From positions 1-64,000 of IMG/VR virus record IMGVR_UViG_3300045921_000730: 64,000 bases of DNA; one strand, written 5' to 3'. Shown piece after piece: positions 3 through 63,654 of this stretch (position 1 is its first letter; each line of letters starts with the position of its first letter). A model generated the notes under the pieces. The model was not told the origin of the DNA. It searched no databases and saw nothing but the letters and a program-made list of their open reading frames with translations. Position numbers and translations under genes: made by a program.

Positions 3-1121
3 AGACAGGAAATTCGAGATAGGTTCAAAAGTCAGCTTGATTCCTGGTTCCAGCAATCTGCTGTTAAATATGGAATAGGGATGTTCAAATCAGATCATGA
101 AACTGGTCGATTGGGTCGGGTTTTTGGTGGCAAAGGCAATCTGATTAGACGTGCAAAGGGACTTATTTCAAAAGAAGAATGGAAACAAAAACGACTTCTT
201 CCGTTGTATCTAATTGGTGAAGCACCAGCTAAGGGGAATCGCAAGTTTGAGTTCCGGGAAGACCATGTTGTCTTCAAGCCATATAACGGTTGTAAAATCA
301 AAATCGATCTTCCTAACATAAGGAAGAACTGGTCGAGAATGTGGAACCAGCTCTTAGTTATGGCTTCTGAGAAGCAATTGCCGATCACTGTTTCTTTAAC
401 TATTGAATCCATCTCTTTTTCTTTTGATGACGTTAAGGTGAAACAAGAGATCAGAAAAATACCAAAACCAATCAAGAATAGATATGCAGGCATTGATCTG
501 AACCCAAATTATATTGGCATTTCTGTTTTTGATGGAACAAAACTGATTGAAACCAGATTGTTTTCATTAAAGACATTAACTGGAAAGAATGCCAGTGCTT
601 CAAAACTTGAACATGAAACAAGAGAAATTGGGCATGCAATAGGTAAGTGGCTTCAACATCTACGAGTTGATAAGTTATTTATTGAAAAGCTAGAATTTAA
701 ACAAGGCGATAAAGGCATTGGCAAAAACTTCAATCGCTTAACACAGAACCAATGGAAGAAAATAACTTTAAGGTCAATTCTAGCCAAATACTTCAAGCTA
801 TACGAAATCAATGCTGCCTATTCATCAACTATTGGCAACATCTTACATCCGGAATTACCAGACCCGGTAGCAGCTAGTACTGAGATTGCACAACGAGGCT
901 ACCGGCTTGTGATACTCAAGAACAAACAGTTCTATCCAAAACTACCAGCAATAAAGTATCTAGAGGACCTATGGAAGGAAACCAAGATACCTTTGGTAGA
1001 GACTTGGAAAGAGCTACATTCTTGGGTCAAAAACTCGAAATTGAAATATCGGGTTCCGGTTCCAAATGAGTCGGTTTTTAGAATTTTCCAGTCACCAGCT
1101 AGTTTGGTTGGTGTTTTATAG
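3..1121 (+). CDS. tnpB: TnpB-family RNA-guided nuclease (IS607-type, no Zn ribbon), 5'-truncated by window edge
   Basis: Frame is open from nt 3 (RQEIRDRFKSQLDSWFQQSAVKYGIG-MFK). RuvC-I GIDLNPNYIG, RuvC-II FIEKL, RuvC-III NAAYSS..DPVAAS. IS607-like end GTTTTATAGATTTGTAT...TATGG to ~1150. Confidence 0.8.
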   Translation, partial: RQEIRDRFKSQLDSWFQQSAVKYGIGMFKSDHETGRLGRVFGGKGNLIRRAKGLISKEEWKQKRLLPLYLIGEAPAKGNRKFEFREDHVVFKPYNGCKIKIDLPNIRKNWSRMWNQLLVMASEKQLPITVSLTIESISFSFDDVKVKQEIRKIPKPIKNRYAGIDLNPNYIGISVFDGTKLIETRLFSLKTLTGKNASASKLEHETREIGHAIGKWLQHLRVDKLFIEKLEFKQGDKGIGKNFNRLTQNQWKKITLRSILAKYFKLYEINAAYSSTIGNILHPELPDPVAASTEIAQRGYRLVILKNKQFYPKLPAIKYLEDLWKETKIPLVETWKELHSWVKNSKLKYRVPVPNESVFRIFQSPASLVGVL

Positions 1122-1160: not shown

Positions 1161-1976
1161 TTATGTGATCATACCCTTTAATTGTTCAACGTCAATAATT
1201 TTTACATTTAGTTGTTTTGCTTTATCAAGTTTTGTGGACGATCCATTAATATTTTCGGCAACAACAAAAGATGTTGTTTTTGAAACAGATCCAGACACCT
1301 TTCCGCCCAATAAAACAATCTGTTCTTCGAGTTCTTTGGAACGAAAGCCCGTAAAAACAAAAGTAAGATTGTTTAATTTACCTTGTGGTTTTGGTTGATA
1401 TGGAGCCAATATAATATATTTGCTTACTTTACCAAAGAATTCAACAAATTTTGAATAACCATTAGCAATTTTTGTTGCTGTTTTATGATCAAACCCATCA
1501 ACGAGTGTAATATCAAGAACCGATTGACATTTGGTCATATCTCCTTCAAACGCTTCGTAAAGTTTTTTCATTTTACGAATACCAATCCCGCGACCGAACG
1601 CAGGATGTGCCCCCATTAAAACATATAAAGGAATGTTTGTCAGTTTGTCTCGGAGCCCCTTGTAGATCTTTTTTCCGTTTGCTTTTCCAATTACACCACA
1701 AACTTCACTTTCAGTAATTGAAATAATATCTTCTGGTTTCGTAAAACCAACATTATATAAAGCACGAAGACTTCCTTCCTTAAGAGAAGGAATATCAAGC
1801 TCTGCAAAGAAATCAAGAAGTTGCTGGAACAGTACTTCTTCATGAGTATCTTTGTTCTTTAAAACAATATCTACGGCAGTATCATTCCAGCACCAGTTTC
1901 CAGCACCAACGAGTTGATCAATTTGTTGATTAAACCACTTGAGGTATTTTTCGTTATATGAATTCATTATTTTCAT
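1161..1976 (-). CDS. ligA: NAD-dependent DNA ligase, C-terminal half (HhH + BRCT)
   Basis: HhH-like GFGRGIGIRKMKKL and GFDHKTA; BRCT 'FVFTGFRSKELEEQIVLLGGKVSGSVSKTTSFVV...STKLDKAKQLNVKII'. Confidence 0.9.
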   Translation of the reverse strand: MKIMNSYNEKYLKWFNQQIDQLVGAGNWCWNDTAVDIVLKNKDTHEEVLFQQLLDFFAELDIPSLKEGSLRALYNVGFTKPEDIISITESEVCGVIGKANGKKIYKGLRDKLTNIPLYVLMGAHPAFGRGIGIRKMKKLYEAFEGDMTKCQSVLDITLVDGFDHKTATKIANGYSKFVEFFGKVSKYIILAPYQPKPQGKLNNLTFVFTGFRSKELEEQIVLLGGKVSGSVSKTTSFVVAENINGSSTKLDKAKQLNVKIIDVEQLKGMIT

Positions 1977-2023
1977 GACACAAAAAGTTATTTAAAAAGA
2001 AGTTCAACACTCAACAAGTACAA

Positions 2024-3271
2024 TTATGAAATAGGCATAGATTTAATAACTTTGGTTATTAACGGAATAACATCTCCGCTACGGACTATACCAACGATAG
2101 CGCCAGGTCCAATATTATTTTCAACAATGAACTTTGCATTGAATGCTGTGCAATAATTAATTTCTACACCAAGAAGTTTAATTGGGTTTACTTTGAGGCG
2201 CGGTTTGAGATAACCATCTTTACTTACAGACCACTGAACTTCAATCACTTCTGTTTCAGCGTAATTATTAGCATCAGCAATTTTAAATTTTCGTGCATAC
2301 TCAGGATTTAATGTATCTTTGGTTGGTACAATTTTATTTCGTAAGTCGATGTCATTCACTTCAATCACAACACCATCAATTTCGTAAGAAGTTGGAGCGC
2401 GAAATTCGTTGAGAATCTCTGTAAGGGATCCGTCATTTACATCCCTTCCATAAATTAGTTTGTTTTGAGGAATTTTGAAATCGTTTTTTTCGTGTAAACT
2501 ATAAAGAGTTTCGCGTTTGTTAAAATTATGACCGCCAACAACTACTTCATATGCAATAATGTCAATATATTGATAGACAATGTCTGGATTGGTTTCAGCA
2601 TTCATTACACCAGCCATCATATTACGAGGATTTTTGTATGGTTGTCCAGCGCGATTTTTTACTAGCGGTTGAATTTTAGCAAAATTTTCTTTACTGATAA
2701 TAGCTTCTGCTCTAATAACCATTGGTTCTTTTTCAACAACTCGCATGGGCACCTGTTTGATTTTCATTAAATGACGCGTAATATCAGCACCTTCAATTCC
2801 GTCGCCACGAGAATAAGCAATTTTGAATTGGCCACCTTCTCCATACACTAGAAGAACACTAACGCCATCAAGTTTTTCGGTGACAAATAAATTTTGACTA
2901 TATAGATTATACTTTTTAATCCATTTTTCAATGTCGCCCTCGTACGCTTGTGTAAGAGAACCCATAGAAAAAGGAAGTTTTACTTTACTGCCACGAACTT
3001 CACTTCCCACTTTTGCAAAATAAGGGTGCGAAGGCTGCAGCGTTTCTGCATACCTTTTTACAGAGTCGTACTGCTCATCGGACAAAAAGCTTTCTGCTTC
3101 ATTAAAGTACATTTCGTCAGCATTTTTGAGCATGTCTATGATCTCTTCAAAAGAAAGAGATTCAATGCCAAAAGCTTCAAAAGTATCAATAATTTTTCGG
3201 GAAAACATAAAAGTATCTTTTTGCACGCAGGAGATAAAAGCTACTATAGATGTGTTATTAACAAGTGTCAA
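2024..3271 (-). CDS. ligA: NAD-dependent DNA ligase, N-terminal half (adenylation + OB); start probably 3208
   Basis: KLDG adenylation motif, SRGDG..GADIT, KNPRN, YEIDGVV, OB motif RSGDVIP. Stops before the HhH/BRCT domains. Confidence 0.92.
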   Translation of the reverse strand: MTLVNNTSIVAFISCVQKDTFMFSRKIIDTFEAFGIESLSFEEIIDMLKNADEMYFNEAESFLSDEQYDSVKRYAETLQPSHPYFAKVGSEVRGSKVKLPFSMGSLTQAYEGDIEKWIKKYNLYSQNLFVTEKLDGVSVLLVYGEGGQFKIAYSRGDGIEGADITRHLMKIKQVPMRVVEKEPMVIRAEAIISKENFAKIQPLVKNRAGQPYKNPRNMMAGVMNAETNPDIVYQYIDIIAYEVVVGGHNFNKRETLYSLHEKNDFKIPQNKLIYGRDVNDGSLTEILNEFRAPTSYEIDGVVIEVNDIDLRNKIVPTKDTLNPEYARKFKIADANNYAETEVIEVQWSVSKDGYLKPRLKVNPIKLLGVEINYCTAFNAKFIVENNIGPGAIVGIVRSGDVIPLITKVIKSMPIS

Positions 3272-5440: not shown

Positions 5441-5842
5441 ATGAAAACAGAGACATCAAAGATGACAGAACGAAGAATAATGAACGAAGACGCAAACTCA
5501 AATTCATTGTTGGTATCTCAAAAAGCGTCTGTTGTCTTGGATATAAAAGATATAATTGTTGTTGTTAGTACCGCTATATCAATCACGCTTTCGTGGGCAA
5601 CGATGAGTTCAAGAATTACTCTCTTAGAACAAAGAATTCAGCAGTACGAAAAACAATTCGAAAAACTTGAAAATAAATATGAATCTTTGGGAAATAAAGT
5701 CGATGGTGGTGTCAAATATTTAACACCACCAAATAATCAATACGAAAAACAAATCGAAAAGCTTGAAAATAAATATGAATCCTTGGAAAATAAAGTCAAT
5801 AGTGGCGTCAAATATTTGACGCCACCAAACAATCAACACTAA
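5441..5842 (+). CDS. membrane protein with coiled coil and duplicated 32-aa C-terminal unit
   Basis: TM IIVVVSTAISITLSW, then QYEKQ(F/I)EKLENKYESLxNKVxxGVKYLTPPNN twice. Confidence 0.65.
   Translation: MKTETSKMTERRIMNEDANSNSLLVSQKASVVLDIKDIIVVVSTAISITLSWATMSSRITLLEQRIQQYEKQFEKLENKYESLGNKVDGGVKYLTPPNNQYEKQIEKLENKYESLENKVNSGVKYLTPPNNQH
5642..5833 (+). repeat. 96-bp in-frame tandem duplication (2 copies)
   Basis: 5642-5737 and 5738-5833 align with scattered substitutions. Confidence 0.9.
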
Positions 5843-29953: not shown

Positions 29954-30158
29954 ATGAACTACCGCGTAGCTAAAGACAACGCGGTTTCTGAACTCATCGA
30001 CCCAGCTAACATCACCGGCGCCTCCTTCGGTTTTTGTTTAGAGTCCGACTGCGTTCCACAACCAGACATTTTATTTATGACTACAAATTAATTAGATATC
30101 AATAGGCCAATTCATCCACGCGACTGAAGATCACGTGGTTTTCTCAGCCTTAAGTTTG
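29954..30158 (-). mobile_element. mini-element family A copy 1 (protein-free IS200/IS605-TnpB derivative, ~205 bp)
   Basis: TTTAT | CAAACTTAAGG..CCACGTGA-N7-TCGCGTGG (LE hairpin) ... CCGCGT-N11-ACGCGG-TAGTTCAT (RE); near-identical to six other copies. Confidence 0.9.
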
Positions 30159-38471: not shown

Positions 38472-38568
38472 ATAATTACCACATTAAAACCTGATGTTGT
38501 TTAGACATGAGGATGAATTGTGGATTCCTCCTTTCTTCAATATATTCACACAAAAAATACCAACTTCT

Positions 38569-38774
38569 ATGAACTACCACGCAGTTAAAGACGACACGGT
38601 TTCCGAACTTATCGACCCAGCTAACATCACTGGTGCCTCCTTCGGTTTTTGTTTAATGTCCGACTGCGTCCCACAACCAGACATTATCATTTATAATCAT
38701 AAACCAATTAGATACCATTGTGTTGATTCGTCCATATGACTGAAGATCATGTGGTTTTCTCAACCTTAAAGACA
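38569..38774 (-). mobile_element. mini-element family A copy 2 (diverged), nested next to a left-end remnant of another TnpB family (38472-38525)
   Basis: Same architecture, TTTAT on the left and TAGTTCAT on the right. Confidence 0.88.
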
Positions 38775-50022: not shown

Positions 50023-51425
50023 ATAATTCCCGCAAGGAAACCTAATGTTCTTTAGACGTCAGGATGAATTGCGGACCTTTCATTAGTTAAATTGAAAAAT
50101 TCTAACTTATATAAATAATAGTATATAGTAATTCAAATTTATTGTCAAGTGAATCAGCTTAGAGCCTACAAATATCGCCTTTATCCAACCAAAGATCAAG
50201 AGCAAATTCTAGCTCAATTCTTTGGTGCTAAACGTTGGGTCTTCAACCATTTTCTTCACGAAAACAAACAACGATTTGCTAACAAAGAAAAACATCTGAA
50301 CAATTACGACATCAACGTACAGATTACCCAACTCAAGAAACAACCAGAAACTGCATGGCTTCGTGAAATCGATGATTGGTGTTTGAAACATGCAGCCGTA
50401 GATCTGCACACAGCATACCAAAACTTCTTCAAGTCCATAACAGGAAAACGAAAAGGACCAAAGCTACAAGTGCCTAAATACATGTCTAAAGACTCACGTC
50501 AGTCCTATAGGACTAGAGGCGTTAAAGTTGACATTGAGAACAGCACAGTCAAGTTACCTAAGATCAAGAATGTTAAGGTTGTTATTCACCGCAAATTCAT
50601 CGGAACTATCAAATCCGCTACAATCTCTAAGAACCCTGATGGTCAGTATTACATTTCAGTTCTAGTTGAAGAAGATATCAAGTCTTTACCATCAACCAAA
50701 ACCGAAATTGGTATTGATCTTGGAATTAAGGACTTGCTCATATTGAGCAATGGTGTCAAGTTTCAACATCCCAAGAAAATGCTAGAGAAAGCCAATCTAG
50801 CATTGAAGAAGCAGCAAAAGAAACTAGCAAGAAAGACGAAAAGCAGTAATAACCGAGCTAAACAAAGAACTAAGGTAGCTAGAGCGTATGCTAGGATATC
50901 TAGAATCCGCAACAACTACTATCATGAGATTTCGACGTATCTGGTTAGAAACTTCGATGCCATCTACATGGAAAATCTAAACGTGAAGAGCATACTTCAA
51001 AATAGGAAACTTTCACGAGCAATTCATGAAGCATCTTGGTCTACATTAGTCTCTATGATCTCCTACAAGTGCAATTTCTACGCCAGACCTTTCCACCAAA
51101 TAGATCGCTTTGCCGCTTCTTCAAAAACATGCTCATGTTGTGGTCACGAATTAGAGAAACTTGATCTAGGAACCAGAGATTGGACTTGCCCATCATGTGG
51201 TGCCCAGCACGATCGAGATATCAATGCTGCCATCAACATCAAAAACCTTGGTCAAATAGATCTTTATGACCAACTAATTCCTTCGGGTGCAACAACCGAA
51301 GTGGGATCTTCGATCCCAAAGGCTCTAGTGAAATGGACTACTAAAACCGAGAGGTCTCCAAGTGTTTTTGGAGTTAGTCCAGGGACGGAGCAAGCAAGAC
51401 GTTCTTTAGACGTCTAGTAGTTGAC
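50023..51425 (+). mobile_element. tnpB: IS1341-like (tnpB-only) element; tnpB CDS 50149..51417
   Basis: TTCAT | ATAATTCCCGC..CCTAATGTTCTTTAGACGTCAGGATGAA left end; RuvC D/E/D; RE AGACGTTCTTTAGACGTCTAGTAGTTGAC. Confidence 0.93.
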
Positions 51426-54639: not shown

Positions 54640-54844
54640 ATGAACTACCGCGTAGCTAAAGACAACGCGGTTTCCGAACTCATCGACCCAGCTAACATCA
54701 CCGGCGCCTCCTTCGGTTTTTGTTTAGAGTCCGACTGCGTTCCACAACCAGACATTTTATTTATGACTACAAATTAATTAGATACCAATAGGCCGATTCA
54801 TCCATGTGATTGAAGATCACGTGGTTTTCTCAGCCTTAAGTTTG
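54640..54844 (-). mobile_element. mini-element family A copy 4
   Basis: TTTAT...TAGTTCAT boundaries; differs from copy 5 at 2 nt. Confidence 0.92.
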
Positions 54845-55446: not shown

Positions 55447-55651
55447 ATAAACTACCGCGTAGCTAAAGACAACGCGGTTTCTGAACTCATCGACCCAGCT
55501 AACATCACCGGCGCCTCCTTCGGTTTTTGTTTAGAGTCCGACTGCGTTCCACAACCAGACATTTTATTTATGACTACAAATTAATTAGATACCAATAGGC
55601 CGATTCATCCATGTGATTGAAGATCACGTGGTTTTCTCAGCCTTAAGTTTG
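55447..55651 (-). mobile_element. mini-element family A copy 5
   Basis: TTTAT left boundary; RE variant TAGTTTAT. Confidence 0.92.
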
Positions 55652-59369: not shown

Positions 59370-59574
59370 CAAACTTAAGGCTGAGAAAACCACGTGATCT
59401 TCAGTCACGTGGATGAATCAGCACATTGGTATCTAATTAATTTGTAGTCATAAATAAAATGTCTGGTTGTGGAACGCAGTCGGACTCTAAACAAAAACCG
59501 AAGGAGGCGCCGGTGATGTTAGCTGGGTCGATGAGTTCGGAAACCGCGTTGTCTTTAGCTACGCGGTAGTTCAT
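59370..59574 (+). mobile_element. mini-element family A copy 6
   Basis: TTTAT | CAAAC... perfect LE hairpin CCACGTGA/TCACGTGG ... TAGTTCAT; follows a terminator hairpin at ~59328-59359. Confidence 0.92.
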
Positions 59575-61675: not shown

Positions 61676-63005
61676 TCAATTCAAGAAAACCTGATGTTCT
61701 TTAGACGTCAGGATGAATTGAATTTTTTAGTCCTCTTGAGTTTCAATATACCGTTTAATTGTCTCACTATTATATAAATAATATATGACAAAGGTATTTA
61801 TATAAAATGTTCATCAGACAAAATTACAGAATATATCCTAACAAAGAGCAGACCTCAATTCTGAACCAATGGCTTGGTCAGGGTAGATATATTTGGAATT
61901 TCATGTTAACCAAGAACATAGAAACATACCAAGAAACTAAAAAGTTTATTTTTGAAATAGACATGAATAATCTTCTACCTGGTTTGAAACGGCAAGAAGA
62001 AACATCTTGGTTAAAAGAAATACCAGCACAATGTTTACAACAGAAGTGTCAAGATTTGTCACAAGCATTAAAACAGTCTTTTAAGACAAATAAAAGCAAA
62101 AAGGGATTTCCAAAATTTAAGTCAAAAAAGACTGATGAATCTGGCATCAGATTCCCATCATTCAAATTTGAGGGTGACAGGATCAAGTTACCTAAAATGT
62201 CACAAGGAATCAAAATTAAGTTACATCGTGATTTGCTTGGGAAGAAATCATCAGTTACTATATTTCGAGATAAAACCGGAGTCTTCTGGGCATCTATACT
62301 TGTTTCTATTGATGATGTTGTCCCAACGAACACTATTTCTAATGTGGTAGGTATTGATGTCGGATTAAAAGAATTCGCGGTCACATCAGACGCTGAAATA
62401 ATCAAAAACCCGAAATTTCTAAAAAGAACGGCAAAGAAACTAGCAAAAGCTCAAGCAAAACATAGTAGAAAAGAAAAAGGTTCGTCAAACAAAGAAAAAC
62501 AAAGAATTAAAGTTGCAAAAATTTACAGAAAAATAAGCAATCAACGTAAAGATTTTATCAATCAAGTTGCTAGTTCGATAGGCAAGACAAACGACTTGAT
62601 TGTAGTTGAAAATCTCAATGTAAAAGGTATGATGAAAAATCCTAACCTAGCTAAATCTATTTCAGATGTTAGTTGGGGAATGTTTTTATCCGCTTTAAAG
62701 TGGCATTGTAAGAAACGGGGCAAACACTTCGTTGAGATTTCACAATGGTATCCTTCAAGCAAAATGTGTTCATGTTGTGGAAATAAAAAATCAGATTTGT
62801 CCTTGAGCGACAGAACATACGAATGTAAAGAATGTGGTTTCACGATGGATAGAGATTTAAATGCTGCCATTAACATTCTGAAAGAAGGTATCAACCTTTT
62901 CAATACCGTAGGAACTACGGAAATTAACGCCTGTGGAGATATGAGTTCTGAAGTAGGGAACTCAGCCCAGGAAGCTAGTTGTTCTTTAGACAACTAGCAG
63001 TTCAC
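61672..63005 (+). mobile_element. tnpB: IS1341-like (tnpB-only) element; tnpB CDS 61807..62997
   Basis: TTTAT | ATAATC..CCTGATGTTCTTTAGACGTCAGGATGAA left end; GIDVG / VENL / DRDLNAA; RE CTAGTTGTTCTTTAGACAACTAGCAGTTCAC. Confidence 0.93.
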
Positions 63006-63448: not shown

Positions 63449-63654
63449 CATCTTCAGGGCTGAGAAAACCACGTGATCTTCAGTCGCGTGGATGAATCAG
63501 CCCATTGGTATCTAATTAATTTGTAGTCATAAATAGTAATGTCTGGTTGTGGGACGCAGTCGGACTCTAAACAAAAACCGAAGGAGGCGCCGGTGATGTT
63601 AGCTGGGTCGATGAGTTCGGAAACCGCGTTGTCTTTAGCTACGCGGTAGTTCAT
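63449..63654 (+). mobile_element. mini-element family A copy 7
   Basis: TTTAT...TAGTTCAT boundaries. Confidence 0.92.

What the first reader, a model, noticed from the sequence alone, without database searches (positions are those of the whole stretch)
1957..2030. DNA ligase split by a 68-nt coding gap with matching take-off and landing codons: candidate translational bypass
SEEN (minus strand): ligA N-half ends ...ATT TCA TAA and the C-half frame contains ...AAT TCA TAT AAC 68 nt downstream. TTCATA is directly repeated (2025-2030 and 1957-1962). Removing the 68 nt gives the continuous protein VIKSMPIS-YNEKYLKW...WCWNDTAVD, joining the OB domain to HhH/BRCT. KNOWN: T4 gene 60 bypassing uses matched codons with a stop immediately 3' of the take-off codon across a 50-nt gap. 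INFERRED: programmed ribosomal hop, or a small insertion tolerated as a two-subunit ligase (an ATG at 1976 could re-initiate).
Basis: partly seen in the sequence, partly recalled or inferred. Interest (0 to 1): 0.62.

Follow-up and report, generated by a model that had tools for sequence, protein, structure and literature searches.

The report
Two-gene phage DNA ligase, not bypass
The NAD-dependent DNA ligase of this jumbo phage really is cut in two after its OB domain, but it is most likely made as two separate proteins, as in many related phages where a homing-endonuclease gene sits in the same gap, and not by a ribosome hop.

Summary
On the minus strand the ligase N-half (adenylation + OB) ends ATT TCA TAA at 2024-2032. 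The C-half (HhH + BRCT) resumes AAT TCA TAT at 1956-1964, and the two TCA codons lie 68 nt apart.

The bypass reading is not supported.
- 23 of the 120 best homologues stop within a few residues of the same point.
- All 12 split loci whose C-half DNA I read (11 distinct lineages) give the C-half its own ATG, 2-10 codons before the conserved Y..WF.
- Nine further split loci carry a reverse-strand DUF723/Vsr-like homing-endonuclease gene in the gap. Several also have a TTGACA-17-TATAAT promoter and a GGAG ribosome-binding site before the C-half.
- A 98.7%-identical relative has a 49-nt insertion, a copy of a gene-start repeat of this genome, directly 5' of ATG 1967. That makes its gap 117 nt and closes the frame from ATG 1976.
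- The gap has no stem-loop (z = +1.16) and no SD-like triplet before the landing codon.
- Matched codons of this kind occur in 31% of ordinary adjacent gene pairs of the same genome.

T5-like phages annotate ligase subunits A and B broken at the same domain boundary. A complex model supports binding of the two halves (0.73; best control 0.01).

Verdict: a new member of a known kind, of low interest. No reads could be inspected.

The parts
3243..3271 (-). sigma-70-like promoter (TTGACA-17-TATAGT, 11 of 12) upstream of the N-half start
   Evidence: It is a consensus match only. No such site is found in the gap between the halves.
2024..3208 (-). Ligase N-half gene: ATG 3208 to TAA 2026-2024, 394 aa, adenylation + OB domains. 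The listed ORF from TTG 3271 is probably too long.
   Evidence: Pfam. NCBIfam LigA profile positions 3-380 of 652. Aligns to solved LigA chains up to about residue 393-394 (2owo, 1v9p).
2027..2029 (-). TCA, last sense codon of the N-half (the proposed take-off codon), followed by TAA
   Evidence: Matched-codon null of 31%.
1968..2023 (-). 56-nt AT-rich spacer between the N-half stop and the C-half ATG. No predicted structure, no promoter or terminator match, no SD-like motif.
   Evidence: Fold: MFE -6.6 kcal/mol, z = +1.16, and 178 of 200 shuffles fold as well. Promoter and terminator scan. Identical in four assemblies except for a 49-nt insertion at its 3' edge in L089. No similarity to the inserts of other split loci.
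1161..1967 (-). Ligase C-half gene: ATG 1967 to stop 1163-1161, 268 aa. It holds a Trp-rich module (residues 1-56), then HhH and BRCT. An in-frame ATG at 1976 would add MKI.
   Evidence: Pfam. NCBIfam LigA profile 435-652 of 652. Alignment A2 of 12 stand-alone C-halves, all starting with M 2-10 residues before the invariant Y8/W11/F12. L089 closes the frame from ATG 1976.
1959..1961 (-). TCA, third codon of the C-half (the proposed landing codon)
   Evidence: The same TCA TAT AAC (S-Y-N) occurs at the start of the C-half of L087, whose N-half does not end in TCA.

Best explanation
The locus is a 'gene in pieces'. The phage's NAD-dependent DNA ligase is encoded by two adjacent same-strand genes, cut at the boundary between the OB domain and the module that replaces the Zn finger.

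How it most likely works:
- The N-half (adenylation + OB, 394 aa) terminates normally at TAA 2026-2024.
- The C-half (Trp-rich module + HhH + BRCT, 268 aa) is started independently at ATG 1967, probably on the same transcript from the promoter at 3271-3243.
- The two polypeptides then assemble non-covalently through the interface that is intramolecular in unsplit ligases.

How it most likely arose: the cut belongs to a recurrent hot spot at which a reverse-strand DUF723/Vsr-like homing-endonuclease cassette splits this ligase family. The window would be an endonuclease-less end state with only a 56-nt spacer left.

What is shown: the split, its recurrence, the independent starts in relatives, the endonuclease in relatives, and the variable gap.

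What is inferred: loss of an endonuclease in the window's own lineage, co-transcription, SD-independent initiation, and assembly and activity of the two pieces.
For: 1. Of the 120 best homologues of the N-half, 23 are 390-415 aa and end within a few residues of the same point. The other 97 are continuous proteins of 616-672 aa.
2. Nine further split loci read as DNA have a 247-325-aa reverse-strand gene in the gap: L085, L087, L170, L171, L172, L173, L047, L022 and L100. In eight of them Pfam shows DUF723 or DUF559, PHROGs (scanned in four) call it HNH or homing endonuclease, or both. In most it overlaps the N-half tail in antisense.
3. Others have no endonuclease and short gaps: L086 313 nt, L117 136 nt, the P0032 locus 84 nt, the window 56 nt, L089 105 nt.
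4. All 12 C-halves start with their own ATG, 2-10 codons before the invariant Y..WF. Several have TTGACA-17-TATAAT and GGAG upstream. Further stand-alone C-halves of 260-273 aa exist in the database.
5. On a tree of the N-parts the split state needs 16 changes, at least 10 of them forced by well-supported branches.
6. Relative L089 (98.7% nt identity) carries a 49-nt insertion directly 5' of ATG 1967. The insertion is a copy of a dispersed repeat that, in at least four copies in this genome, ends about 5 nt before a gene's ATG, with the same spacing as in L089.
7. Window versus L089: N-half 12 synonymous and 5 non-synonymous codon differences; C-half 6 and 4.
8. Complex model: ipSAE 0.73, best of 3 controls 0.01. 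That mark was reached by 58 of 80 solved complexes and 2 of 110 mismatched pairs. Runs agree in at least 77% of contacts and partner pLDDT is at least 85. The interface joins OB residues 324-335, 357-365 and 390-393 to C-half residues 4-52.
9. T5-like phages annotate NAD ligase subunits A and B, cut at the same OB boundary.
Against: - The window's spacer has no SD-like motif and no promoter match, so how well the C-half is translated here is unknown. About 46% of this genome's ORFs also lack an SD 4-mer.
- The window has no endonuclease gene and no recognisable remnant of one. The spacer shows no similarity to the cassettes of other loci, and there is no close DUF723 endonuclease elsewhere in the 244 kb held. 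The endonuclease origin of this particular split therefore rests on analogy.
- The decayed duplicate of the OB end seen upstream of the C-half in L022, L172, L085 and L117 is not detectable in the window.
- The complex score may only recall the intrachain contacts of solved full-length ligases.
Confidence: 0.85

Rival explanations
1. Programmed translational bypass. Peptidyl-tRNA(Ser) takes off at TCA 2029-2027 next to TAA, the ribosome slides 68 nt and lands on TCA 1961-1959, giving one full-length ligase.
For: [quoted passage not shown]
Against: - The MFE fold leaves the take-off codon unpaired and the region folds no better than shuffles (z = +1.16).
- There is no GAG, GGG, GGA or AGG 5-7 nt before the landing codon. 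These features are listed in bioRxiv 10.1101/2022.08.31.505936.
- The gap is 68 nt here and 117 nt in the 98.7%-identical relative L089, where the extra 49 nt is a gene-start element.
- The downstream half has its own conserved ATG in all 12 split loci whose C-half I read (11 distinct lineages), most with gaps of 0.8-1.6 kb that no hop could cross.
- The codon match occurs in 31% of ordinary gene pairs.
Confidence: 0.03
2. A decaying gene. The split inactivated the ligase, or at least its C-half is no longer expressed in the window's lineage, and the two ORFs are intact only because the event is recent.
For: No SD, promoter or endonuclease in the 56-nt spacer. Relative L089 has a proper gene-start element that the window lacks.
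Against: - Both ORFs are intact in four assemblies about 1% apart, with more synonymous than non-synonymous changes.
- The same two-piece arrangement persists in many diverged lineages with intact HhH and BRCT domains.
- The predicted interface is retained.
Confidence: 0.08
3. RNA-level removal of the 68 nt: a very small intron, a bulge-helix-bulge-type excision, or editing.
For: None beyond the colinearity of the joined protein.
Against: - No Rfam family matches in the window locus or in six split relatives at E <= 0.1.
- 68 nt is far below group I or II intron sizes (established knowledge).
- There is no predicted helix at the junctions.
- The gap length varies between near-identical relatives.
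Confidence: 0.02
4. Assembly or sequencing artefact that introduced the 68 nt.
For: None.
Against: Four independent assemblies from different samples carry the same junction: the IMG/VR record, Logan SRR16893473, Logan SRR30649436 and JGI 3300045922.
Confidence: 0.01

Closest known systems
Two-gene NAD-dependent DNA ligase of T5-like phages (annotated subunits A and B, e.g. Salmonella phage vB_Sen-E22 MT311645, Vibrio phage KIT04 LC487410, Pantoea phage AAS21 in PMC7232348)
   Same: Adjacent same-strand genes. Subunit A = adenylation + OB, ending at OB profile position 71 of 79 (window: 73 of 79). Subunit B = HhH + BRCT. The spacer is about 200 nt (E22) or about 1 kb with an extra ORF (KIT04).
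   Different: Only about 24% identity in the N-half, and no significant BLASTP similarity in the C-half. So this is the same arrangement in another lineage, probably an independent event. The T5-type subunit B starts with Cys-rich sequence (seen by eye in the alignment, not tested). The window has a Trp-rich module instead.
T4 topoisomerase genes 39/60 split by the MobA homing-endonuclease cassette (bioRxiv 10.1101/2022.08.31.505936)
   Same: An endonuclease cassette repeatedly invades one site of a DNA-enzyme gene and splits it. The element adds tails to both pieces and carries a copy of the target region. Some lineages later lose the endonuclease and keep the split.
   Different: No bypass cassette here. 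The endonuclease in relatives is DUF723/Vsr-like and on the opposite strand, not HNH MobA. The downstream piece starts at its own ATG with no coding gap inside it.
Fractured genes with Vsr-like free-standing endonucleases (Dassa et al. 2009, PMC2677866) and the Aeh1 nrdA gene split by mobE (PMC3045599)
   Same: Phage DNA-metabolism genes broken in two with an endonuclease gene between. Control elements are brought in with the endonuclease. The paper's newly predicted endonuclease family is Vsr-like, as the gap genes here appear to be, and one of its cases is a DNA ligase.
   Different: Those fractured genes are rejoined by split inteins. Here there is no room for intein halves: N-halves end at most 5 residues after the OB domain and C-halves start at most 10 residues before Y..WF. 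The window also has no endonuclease.

Membership tests
Gene-60-type programmed translational bypass | Matched take-off and landing codons read by one tRNA | tested here: met
   TCA 2029-2027 and TCA 1961-1959. The same criterion is met by 27 of 87 ordinary adjacent gene pairs in this genome.
Gene-60-type programmed translational bypass | [quoted passage not shown] | tested here: met
   TAA 2026-2024. This holds for the last codon of any gene.
Gene-60-type programmed translational bypass | [quoted passage not shown] | tested here: not met
   In the MFE fold the first 28 nt, which include TCA TAA, are unpaired. MFE -6.6 kcal/mol, z = +1.16.
Gene-60-type programmed translational bypass | SD-like triplet (GAG, GGG, GGA or AGG) 5-7 nt 5' of the landing codon | tested here: not met
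   The sequence 5' of the landing TCA is ...CATGAAAATAATGAAT, with no such triplet. Criterion taken.
Gene-60-type programmed translational bypass | Gap of 20-50 nt, under constraint among relatives | tested here: not met
   68 nt in the window, L177 and L178, and 117 nt in L089 at about 99% flanking identity.
Gene-60-type programmed translational bypass | Nascent-peptide signal upstream of take-off | not testable with these tools
   The upstream peptide is the conserved OB-domain end, shared with continuous ligases. No assay was possible.
Endonuclease-generated genes in pieces | A conserved enzyme gene is broken where close homologues are continuous, and both pieces stay intact | tested here: met
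   97 continuous versus 23 split homologues. Split and unsplit forms are interleaved on the tree. Synonymous changes outnumber non-synonymous ones in both halves.
Endonuclease-generated genes in pieces | A free-standing homing-endonuclease gene lies between the pieces | tested here: not met
   The window has only a 56-nt spacer and no endonuclease remnant. Nine homologous split loci do have one.
Endonuclease-generated genes in pieces | The downstream piece has its own translation start | tested here: met
   ATG 1967 aligns with the start of 11 other stand-alone C-halves. In L089 a gene-start repeat abuts it.
Endonuclease-generated genes in pieces | The pieces assemble into an active enzyme | tested here: inconclusive
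   The model supports binding: 0.73 versus best control 0.01, a mark reached by 58 of 80 solved complexes and 2 of 110 mismatched pairs. This may reflect memory of intrachain contacts. Activity was not tested.
Split-intein fractured gene | N- and C-intein halves at the broken ends | tested here: not met
   No extra length at either end and no intein family in Pfam.
Group I or II intron | Recognisable intron RNA between the exons | tested here: not met
   No Rfam match in the window locus or in six split relatives. 68 nt is too short (established knowledge).
T5-type two-subunit NAD ligase | Break after the OB domain, giving adjacent A (adenylation + OB) and B (HhH + BRCT) genes | tested here: met
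   Pfam on vB_Sen-E22 subunits A and B, compared with the window halves.
T5-type two-subunit NAD ligase | Common descent of the split from the T5-type event | tested here: inconclusive
   24% N-half identity and no significant C-half similarity. The window's nearest relatives include continuous ligases, which argues for an independent event.

The most novel reading that the evidence does not exclude
Besides independent initiation, a fraction of ribosomes that terminate or stall at TCA-TAA could hop or re-initiate across the unstructured AT-rich 56-68-nt spacer. That would yield some full-length ligase, or couple the synthesis of the two halves. It would be a structure-less long bypass unlike gene 60.
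Probability: 0.03. Interest if true: 0.85.

Novelty: new member of a known kind. Interest (0 to 1): 0.25.

Why it matters
For the scan, this is a cautionary case. Matched codons next to a stop look like a gene-60 bypass, but they arise by chance in about a third of adjacent gene pairs.

For phage biology, the useful by-product is at family level. NAD-dependent ligases of uncultured jumbo phages are split again and again (at least 10 changes of state among 120 sequences) at the OB boundary. A DUF723/Vsr-like endonuclease gene usually sits in the gap, often beside a promoter and a ribosome-binding site for the downstream half. Endonuclease-less end states such as this window also occur.

If the two pieces assemble as modelled, they are a natural split point for LigA. 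I found no paper describing this for jumbo-phage ligases, but the search library is incomplete.

Tried and rejected
- **Sequencing reads and RNA evidence:** I did not try another route, so read laying was not used and no read-level or transcript evidence exists.
- **Nucleotide search of the locus against cultured phages:** no match.
- **Rfam on the window locus and six split relatives:** only one sub-threshold sRNA hit, in L047 and unrelated to the gap.
- **Endonuclease scar test:** I asked whether the window's spacer is a scar of the endonuclease cassette. blastn-short against all split loci gave only chance 12-14-mers. Antisense translations of the spacer do not resemble the C-termini of the endonucleases.
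- **Target-duplication test:** I asked whether TTCATA belongs to a longer duplication of the N-half end before the C-half start, as in some relatives. The duplicate is significant or near-significant in L022 (0.002), L172 (0.016), L085 (0.02) and L117 (0.04). It is not in the window (0.98) or L089. I therefore do not claim it for the window.
- **Same endonuclease elsewhere in the genome:** only a weak DUF723-like stretch inside a 595-aa ORF near 145.8 kb.
- **Possible decayed C-half duplicate after the N-half stop in L022:** weak (32% over 44 aa) and left open.
- **Sen-NF (H18):** it proved to have a continuous ligase.
- **Single frameshift:** excluded by stops in all three frames.
Full report
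**1. Observation**

The window is the first 64 kb of a 244,293-bp IMG/VR virus record. The record is 36% G+C and estimated 72% complete.

On the minus strand an ORF ends ...AAA TCT ATG CCT ATT TCA TAA, with TCA at 2029-2027 and TAA at 2026-2024. Its probable start is ATG 3208, behind a TTGACA-17-TATAGT promoter match at 3271-3243.

A second ORF reads ATG(1976) AAA ATA ATG(1967) AAT TCA(1961-1959) TAT AAC... and runs to 1161.

- Pfam: the first ORF holds the NAD-ligase adenylation and OB domains (OB profile 1-73 of 79). The second holds HhH (weak) and BRCT.
- NCBIfam: they map to LigA profile positions 3-380 and 435-652 of 652.
- Solved structures: the N-half aligns to LigA chains up to about residue 393-394. 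From my knowledge of the E. coli LigA domain map, that is the end of the OB domain.

The hexamer TTCATA is at 2030-2025 and 1962-1957, and the two TCA codons are 68 nt apart. All three frames have stops in the gap.

**2. Is the codon match more than chance?**

No. I took 87 ordinary adjacent same-strand ORF pairs in the same genome, with 5-150 nt between them.

- In 27 pairs (31%), the last sense codon of the upstream gene recurs in frame in the open leader or the first seven codons of the downstream gene.
- In 6 pairs (7%), the equivalent hexamer is repeated.
- TCA TAT AAC (S-Y-N) also begins the C-half of relative L087, whose N-half does not end in TCA.

**3. Relatives**

A word search with the N-half gave 120 listed homologues. 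Of these, 97 are continuous proteins of 616-672 aa, and 23 are 390-415 aa with only the adenylation and OB domains.

All 23 short proteins stop within a few residues of the same alignment column, with recurring tails: PMPxENM*, PMKFDK*, PGPLx*, PMPI*. Continuous relatives run straight across that column. Those with a long linker match the window's joined sequence (...EPMPxx..Y..WF...GxWxW..VD).

I fetched DNA for the split loci.

- **Loci with a gene in the gap.** L085, L087/L088, L170, L171, L172, L173, L047, L022/L023/L027 and L100 each have a 247-325-aa gene on the opposite strand between the halves. In most it overlaps the N-half tail in antisense.
  - Pfam shows DUF723, or weakly DUF723, DUF4379 and DUF559, in all but L047 and L022, which I only read.
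  - The four scanned against PHROGs hit 'HNH endonuclease' and 'homing endonuclease' families.
  - The L047 and L022 genes share the DUF723-style Cys repeats and the (E/F)DGxxH motif by eye.
  - This appears to be the Vsr-like free-standing endonuclease family of Dassa et al. 2009, judged from the DUF559 hit and their description (PMC2677866).
- **Loci without an endonuclease.** L086 has a 313-nt gap, L117 136 nt, and the P0032 locus 84 nt (gene table only). The window has 56 nt from stop to ATG 1967.

In every one of the 12 loci whose C-half I read, the C-half opens with its own ATG, 2-10 codons before an invariant Y..WF (alignment A2). A separate search with the C-half found further stand-alone C-halves of 260-273 aa with the same kind of start.

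Upstream of that ATG, several loci show a TTGACA-17-TATAAT-type promoter, a GGAG, and a decayed, frame-shifted copy of the codons for GDVIPFI...EP, the end of the OB domain. This duplicate beats shuffles in L022 (0.002), L172 (0.016), L085 (0.02) and L117 (0.04). It does not in the window (0.98).

On a maximum-likelihood tree of the N-parts, the split state needs 16 changes, at least 10 of them forced by well-supported branches. The window's own starred clade of 15 rows holds 4 split and 11 continuous sequences.

The picture is a mobile endonuclease cassette that invades one site of the ligase gene again and again. It supplies a tail for the N-half, and in several loci a promoter and an RBS lie before the C-half. 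This is much like the MobA element in T4-type topoisomerase genes, which also carries a copy of its target and is sometimes lost while the split remains (bioRxiv 10.1101/2022.08.31.505936).

**4. The nearest relatives decide the start codon**

Three other assemblies are 98.7-99% identical to the window over about 2 kb and carry the same N-half stop: L089 (Logan SRR16893473), L177 (Logan SRR30649436) and L178 (JGI 3300045922). This excludes an assembly artefact.

L177 and L178 have the window's gap. L089 has 49 extra nucleotides exactly between ...ATGAAAATA and ATGAATTCA.

- With the insertion, the frame from the 1976-equivalent ATG runs into TAG after six codons.
- The distance between the two TCA codons becomes 117 nt.
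- The insertion is a copy of a dispersed repeat of the window's own genome. In at least four of its copies, the repeat (...GACGTCTAAAGAACATCAGGTTTCCTTGCGGGAATTAT) ends directly before the ATG of a gene. L089 shows the same 5-nt spacing after GGGA.

So in L089 the C-half is marked as an ordinary gene start at the ATG that corresponds to window 1967.

Between the window and L089, the N-half differs at 12 synonymous and 5 non-synonymous codons. The C-half differs at 6 and 4. The numbers are small, but they are in the direction of purifying selection on both halves.

**5. Test against the bypass model**

I took the conserved features of gene-60-type bypass from Manning and Atkins.

| Feature | Result in the window |
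|---|---|
| Matched take-off and landing codons | Present, but also expected by chance |
| Stop or hungry codon after take-off | Present, but true of any gene end |
| Take-off stem-loop with a stable loop | Absent: MFE -6.6 kcal/mol, z = +1.16, 178 of 200 shuffles fold at least as well, take-off codon unpaired |
| SD-like triplet 5-7 nt before landing | Absent |
| AU-rich gap of 20-50 nt under constraint | 68 nt, and 117 nt in a near-identical relative |
| Nascent-peptide signal | Not testable here |

The downstream ORF also does not need joining, because it has its own conserved ATG. I put bypass at about 3%.

Other rival readings fare no better.

- **Intron:** excluded by size, by the absence of any Rfam match and by the absence of junction structure.
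- **Split inteins:** excluded because neither end carries extra length.

**6. How the two pieces would work**

No promoter or terminator match lies in the spacer, so co-transcription with the N-half is the simplest reading.

The spacer has no SD-like 4-mer. Only 54% of 212 ORFs of this genome have one (9% background), so an AT-rich unstructured leader is not unusual here.

A complex model of the N-half with the C-half supports binding.

- ipSAE is 0.73 against 0.01 for the best of three controls.
- That mark was reached by 58 of 80 solved complexes and 2 of 110 mismatched pairs. These counts hold only roughly, because my own alignments were used.
- The runs agree in at least 77% of contacts, and partner pLDDT is at least 85.
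- The interface joins OB residues 324-335, 357-365 and 390-393 to C-half residues 4-52, the Trp-rich module that replaces the Zn finger.

Full-length ligase structures exist, so this may only recall an intrachain interface. That is nevertheless the point: the cut lies next to a large pre-existing interface.

Whether the pieces bind and ligate is not shown.

**7. Comparison with what is known**

Cultured relatives at 40-45% identity carry this ligase with a single ligase annotation under the match: Xanthomonas phages Xoo-sp13 and XacN1, Agrobacterium phage Atu_ph07 and Sinorhizobium phage Phosso.

T5-like phages (Demerecviridae) annotate 'NAD-dependent DNA ligase subunit A' (adenylation + OB, OB profile 2-71 of 79) and 'subunit B' (HhH + BRCT) as adjacent genes. 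They are about 200 nt apart in vB_Sen-E22 and about 1 kb apart with an extra ORF in KIT04. AAS21 lists subunits A and B with one ORF between them.

The arrangement is therefore already known at the level of annotation, in a lineage only about 24% identical to the window.

Endonuclease-driven genes in pieces are also well known: T4 39/60, Aeh1 nrdA and the fractured genes.

I found no paper describing the recurrent split of jumbo-phage ligases, but the library is incomplete.

**8. Verdict**

- The bypass interpretation is not supported.

The window is a new member of a known kind, and interest is low (0.25). That an endonuclease was lost in the window's own lineage is inferred by analogy, because no remnant is detectable. 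No read or RNA evidence could be obtained.

Noticed in passing
window 3-1121 (+); paralogues in the same record at 64664-65779 and 119988-121103; fragments at 86892-87095 and 169933-170511: A 372-aa ORF that runs off the contig start. It has no Pfam, PHROG or NCBIfam hit but is present in at least three 92-93% identical full copies plus fragments, so it looks like a multi-copy IS-like gene. The contig begins inside one copy, directly downstream of the ligase C-half.
   Followed up: partly
window 50024-50106 (-), 61682-61720 (-), 38487-38520 (-); elsewhere in the record at 73274-73417, 99538-99576, 122162-122202, 131885-131921, 160006-160044: A dispersed repeat...CCTGACGTCTAAAGAACATCAGGTTTCCTTGCGGGAATTAT. 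At least four copies end a few nt before a gene's ATG, and it has two potential small hairpins. It is probably a 5'-UTR or regulatory cassette. One copy is the 49-nt insertion before the ligase C-half in relative L089.
   Followed up: partly
window 29961-30017, 38576-38632, 54647-54703, 55454-55510 (all -), 59511-59567, 63591-63647 (+); also 231807, 233243 and 243121 in the record: A 57-nt repeat, CGGTGATGTTAGCTGGGTCGATGAGTTCGG followed by the hairpin AAACCGCGTTGTCTTTAGCTACGCGGT, in nine copies. Five of them lie 26-99 nt upstream of an ORF start. It is a candidate phage promoter or regulatory element.
   Followed up: partly
window 5441-5842 (+): A 133-aa ORF whose C-terminal half is two tandem copies of a unit of about 35 aa (YEKQ.EKLENKYESL.NKV..GVKYLTPPNNQ), seen in the translation.
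   Followed up: no
L022 5200-5280, L172 2320-2372, L085 5400-5461, L117 4230-4289, L086 4470-4520: In split relatives the C-half ATG is preceded by a sigma-70-type promoter and a decayed, frame-shifted copy of the codons for the OB-domain end (GGTGATGTnATTCCnTTTATTTATGGAG), which now supplies the GGAG. This implies a duplicated or cassette-borne copy of the target, like the HomR of the T4 MobA element.
   Followed up: partly
L062 4036-4400: A more distant ligase that keeps the Cys-rich Zn-finger motif is also cut right after the OB domain. The downstream gene has its own start behind TTTACA-17-TATAAT and no endonuclease in the 350-nt gap. So the OB boundary is a break point in more than one ligase lineage.
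   Followed up: partly
C-half residues 1-56 (window 1800-1967, -) and the same region of the continuous homologues: This ligase family lacks the tetracysteine Zn finger of bacterial LigA; LigA profile positions 381-434 are unmatched. It has a Trp-rich module instead (Y..WF...G.W.W..VD), which the complex model packs against the OB domain.
   Followed up: partly
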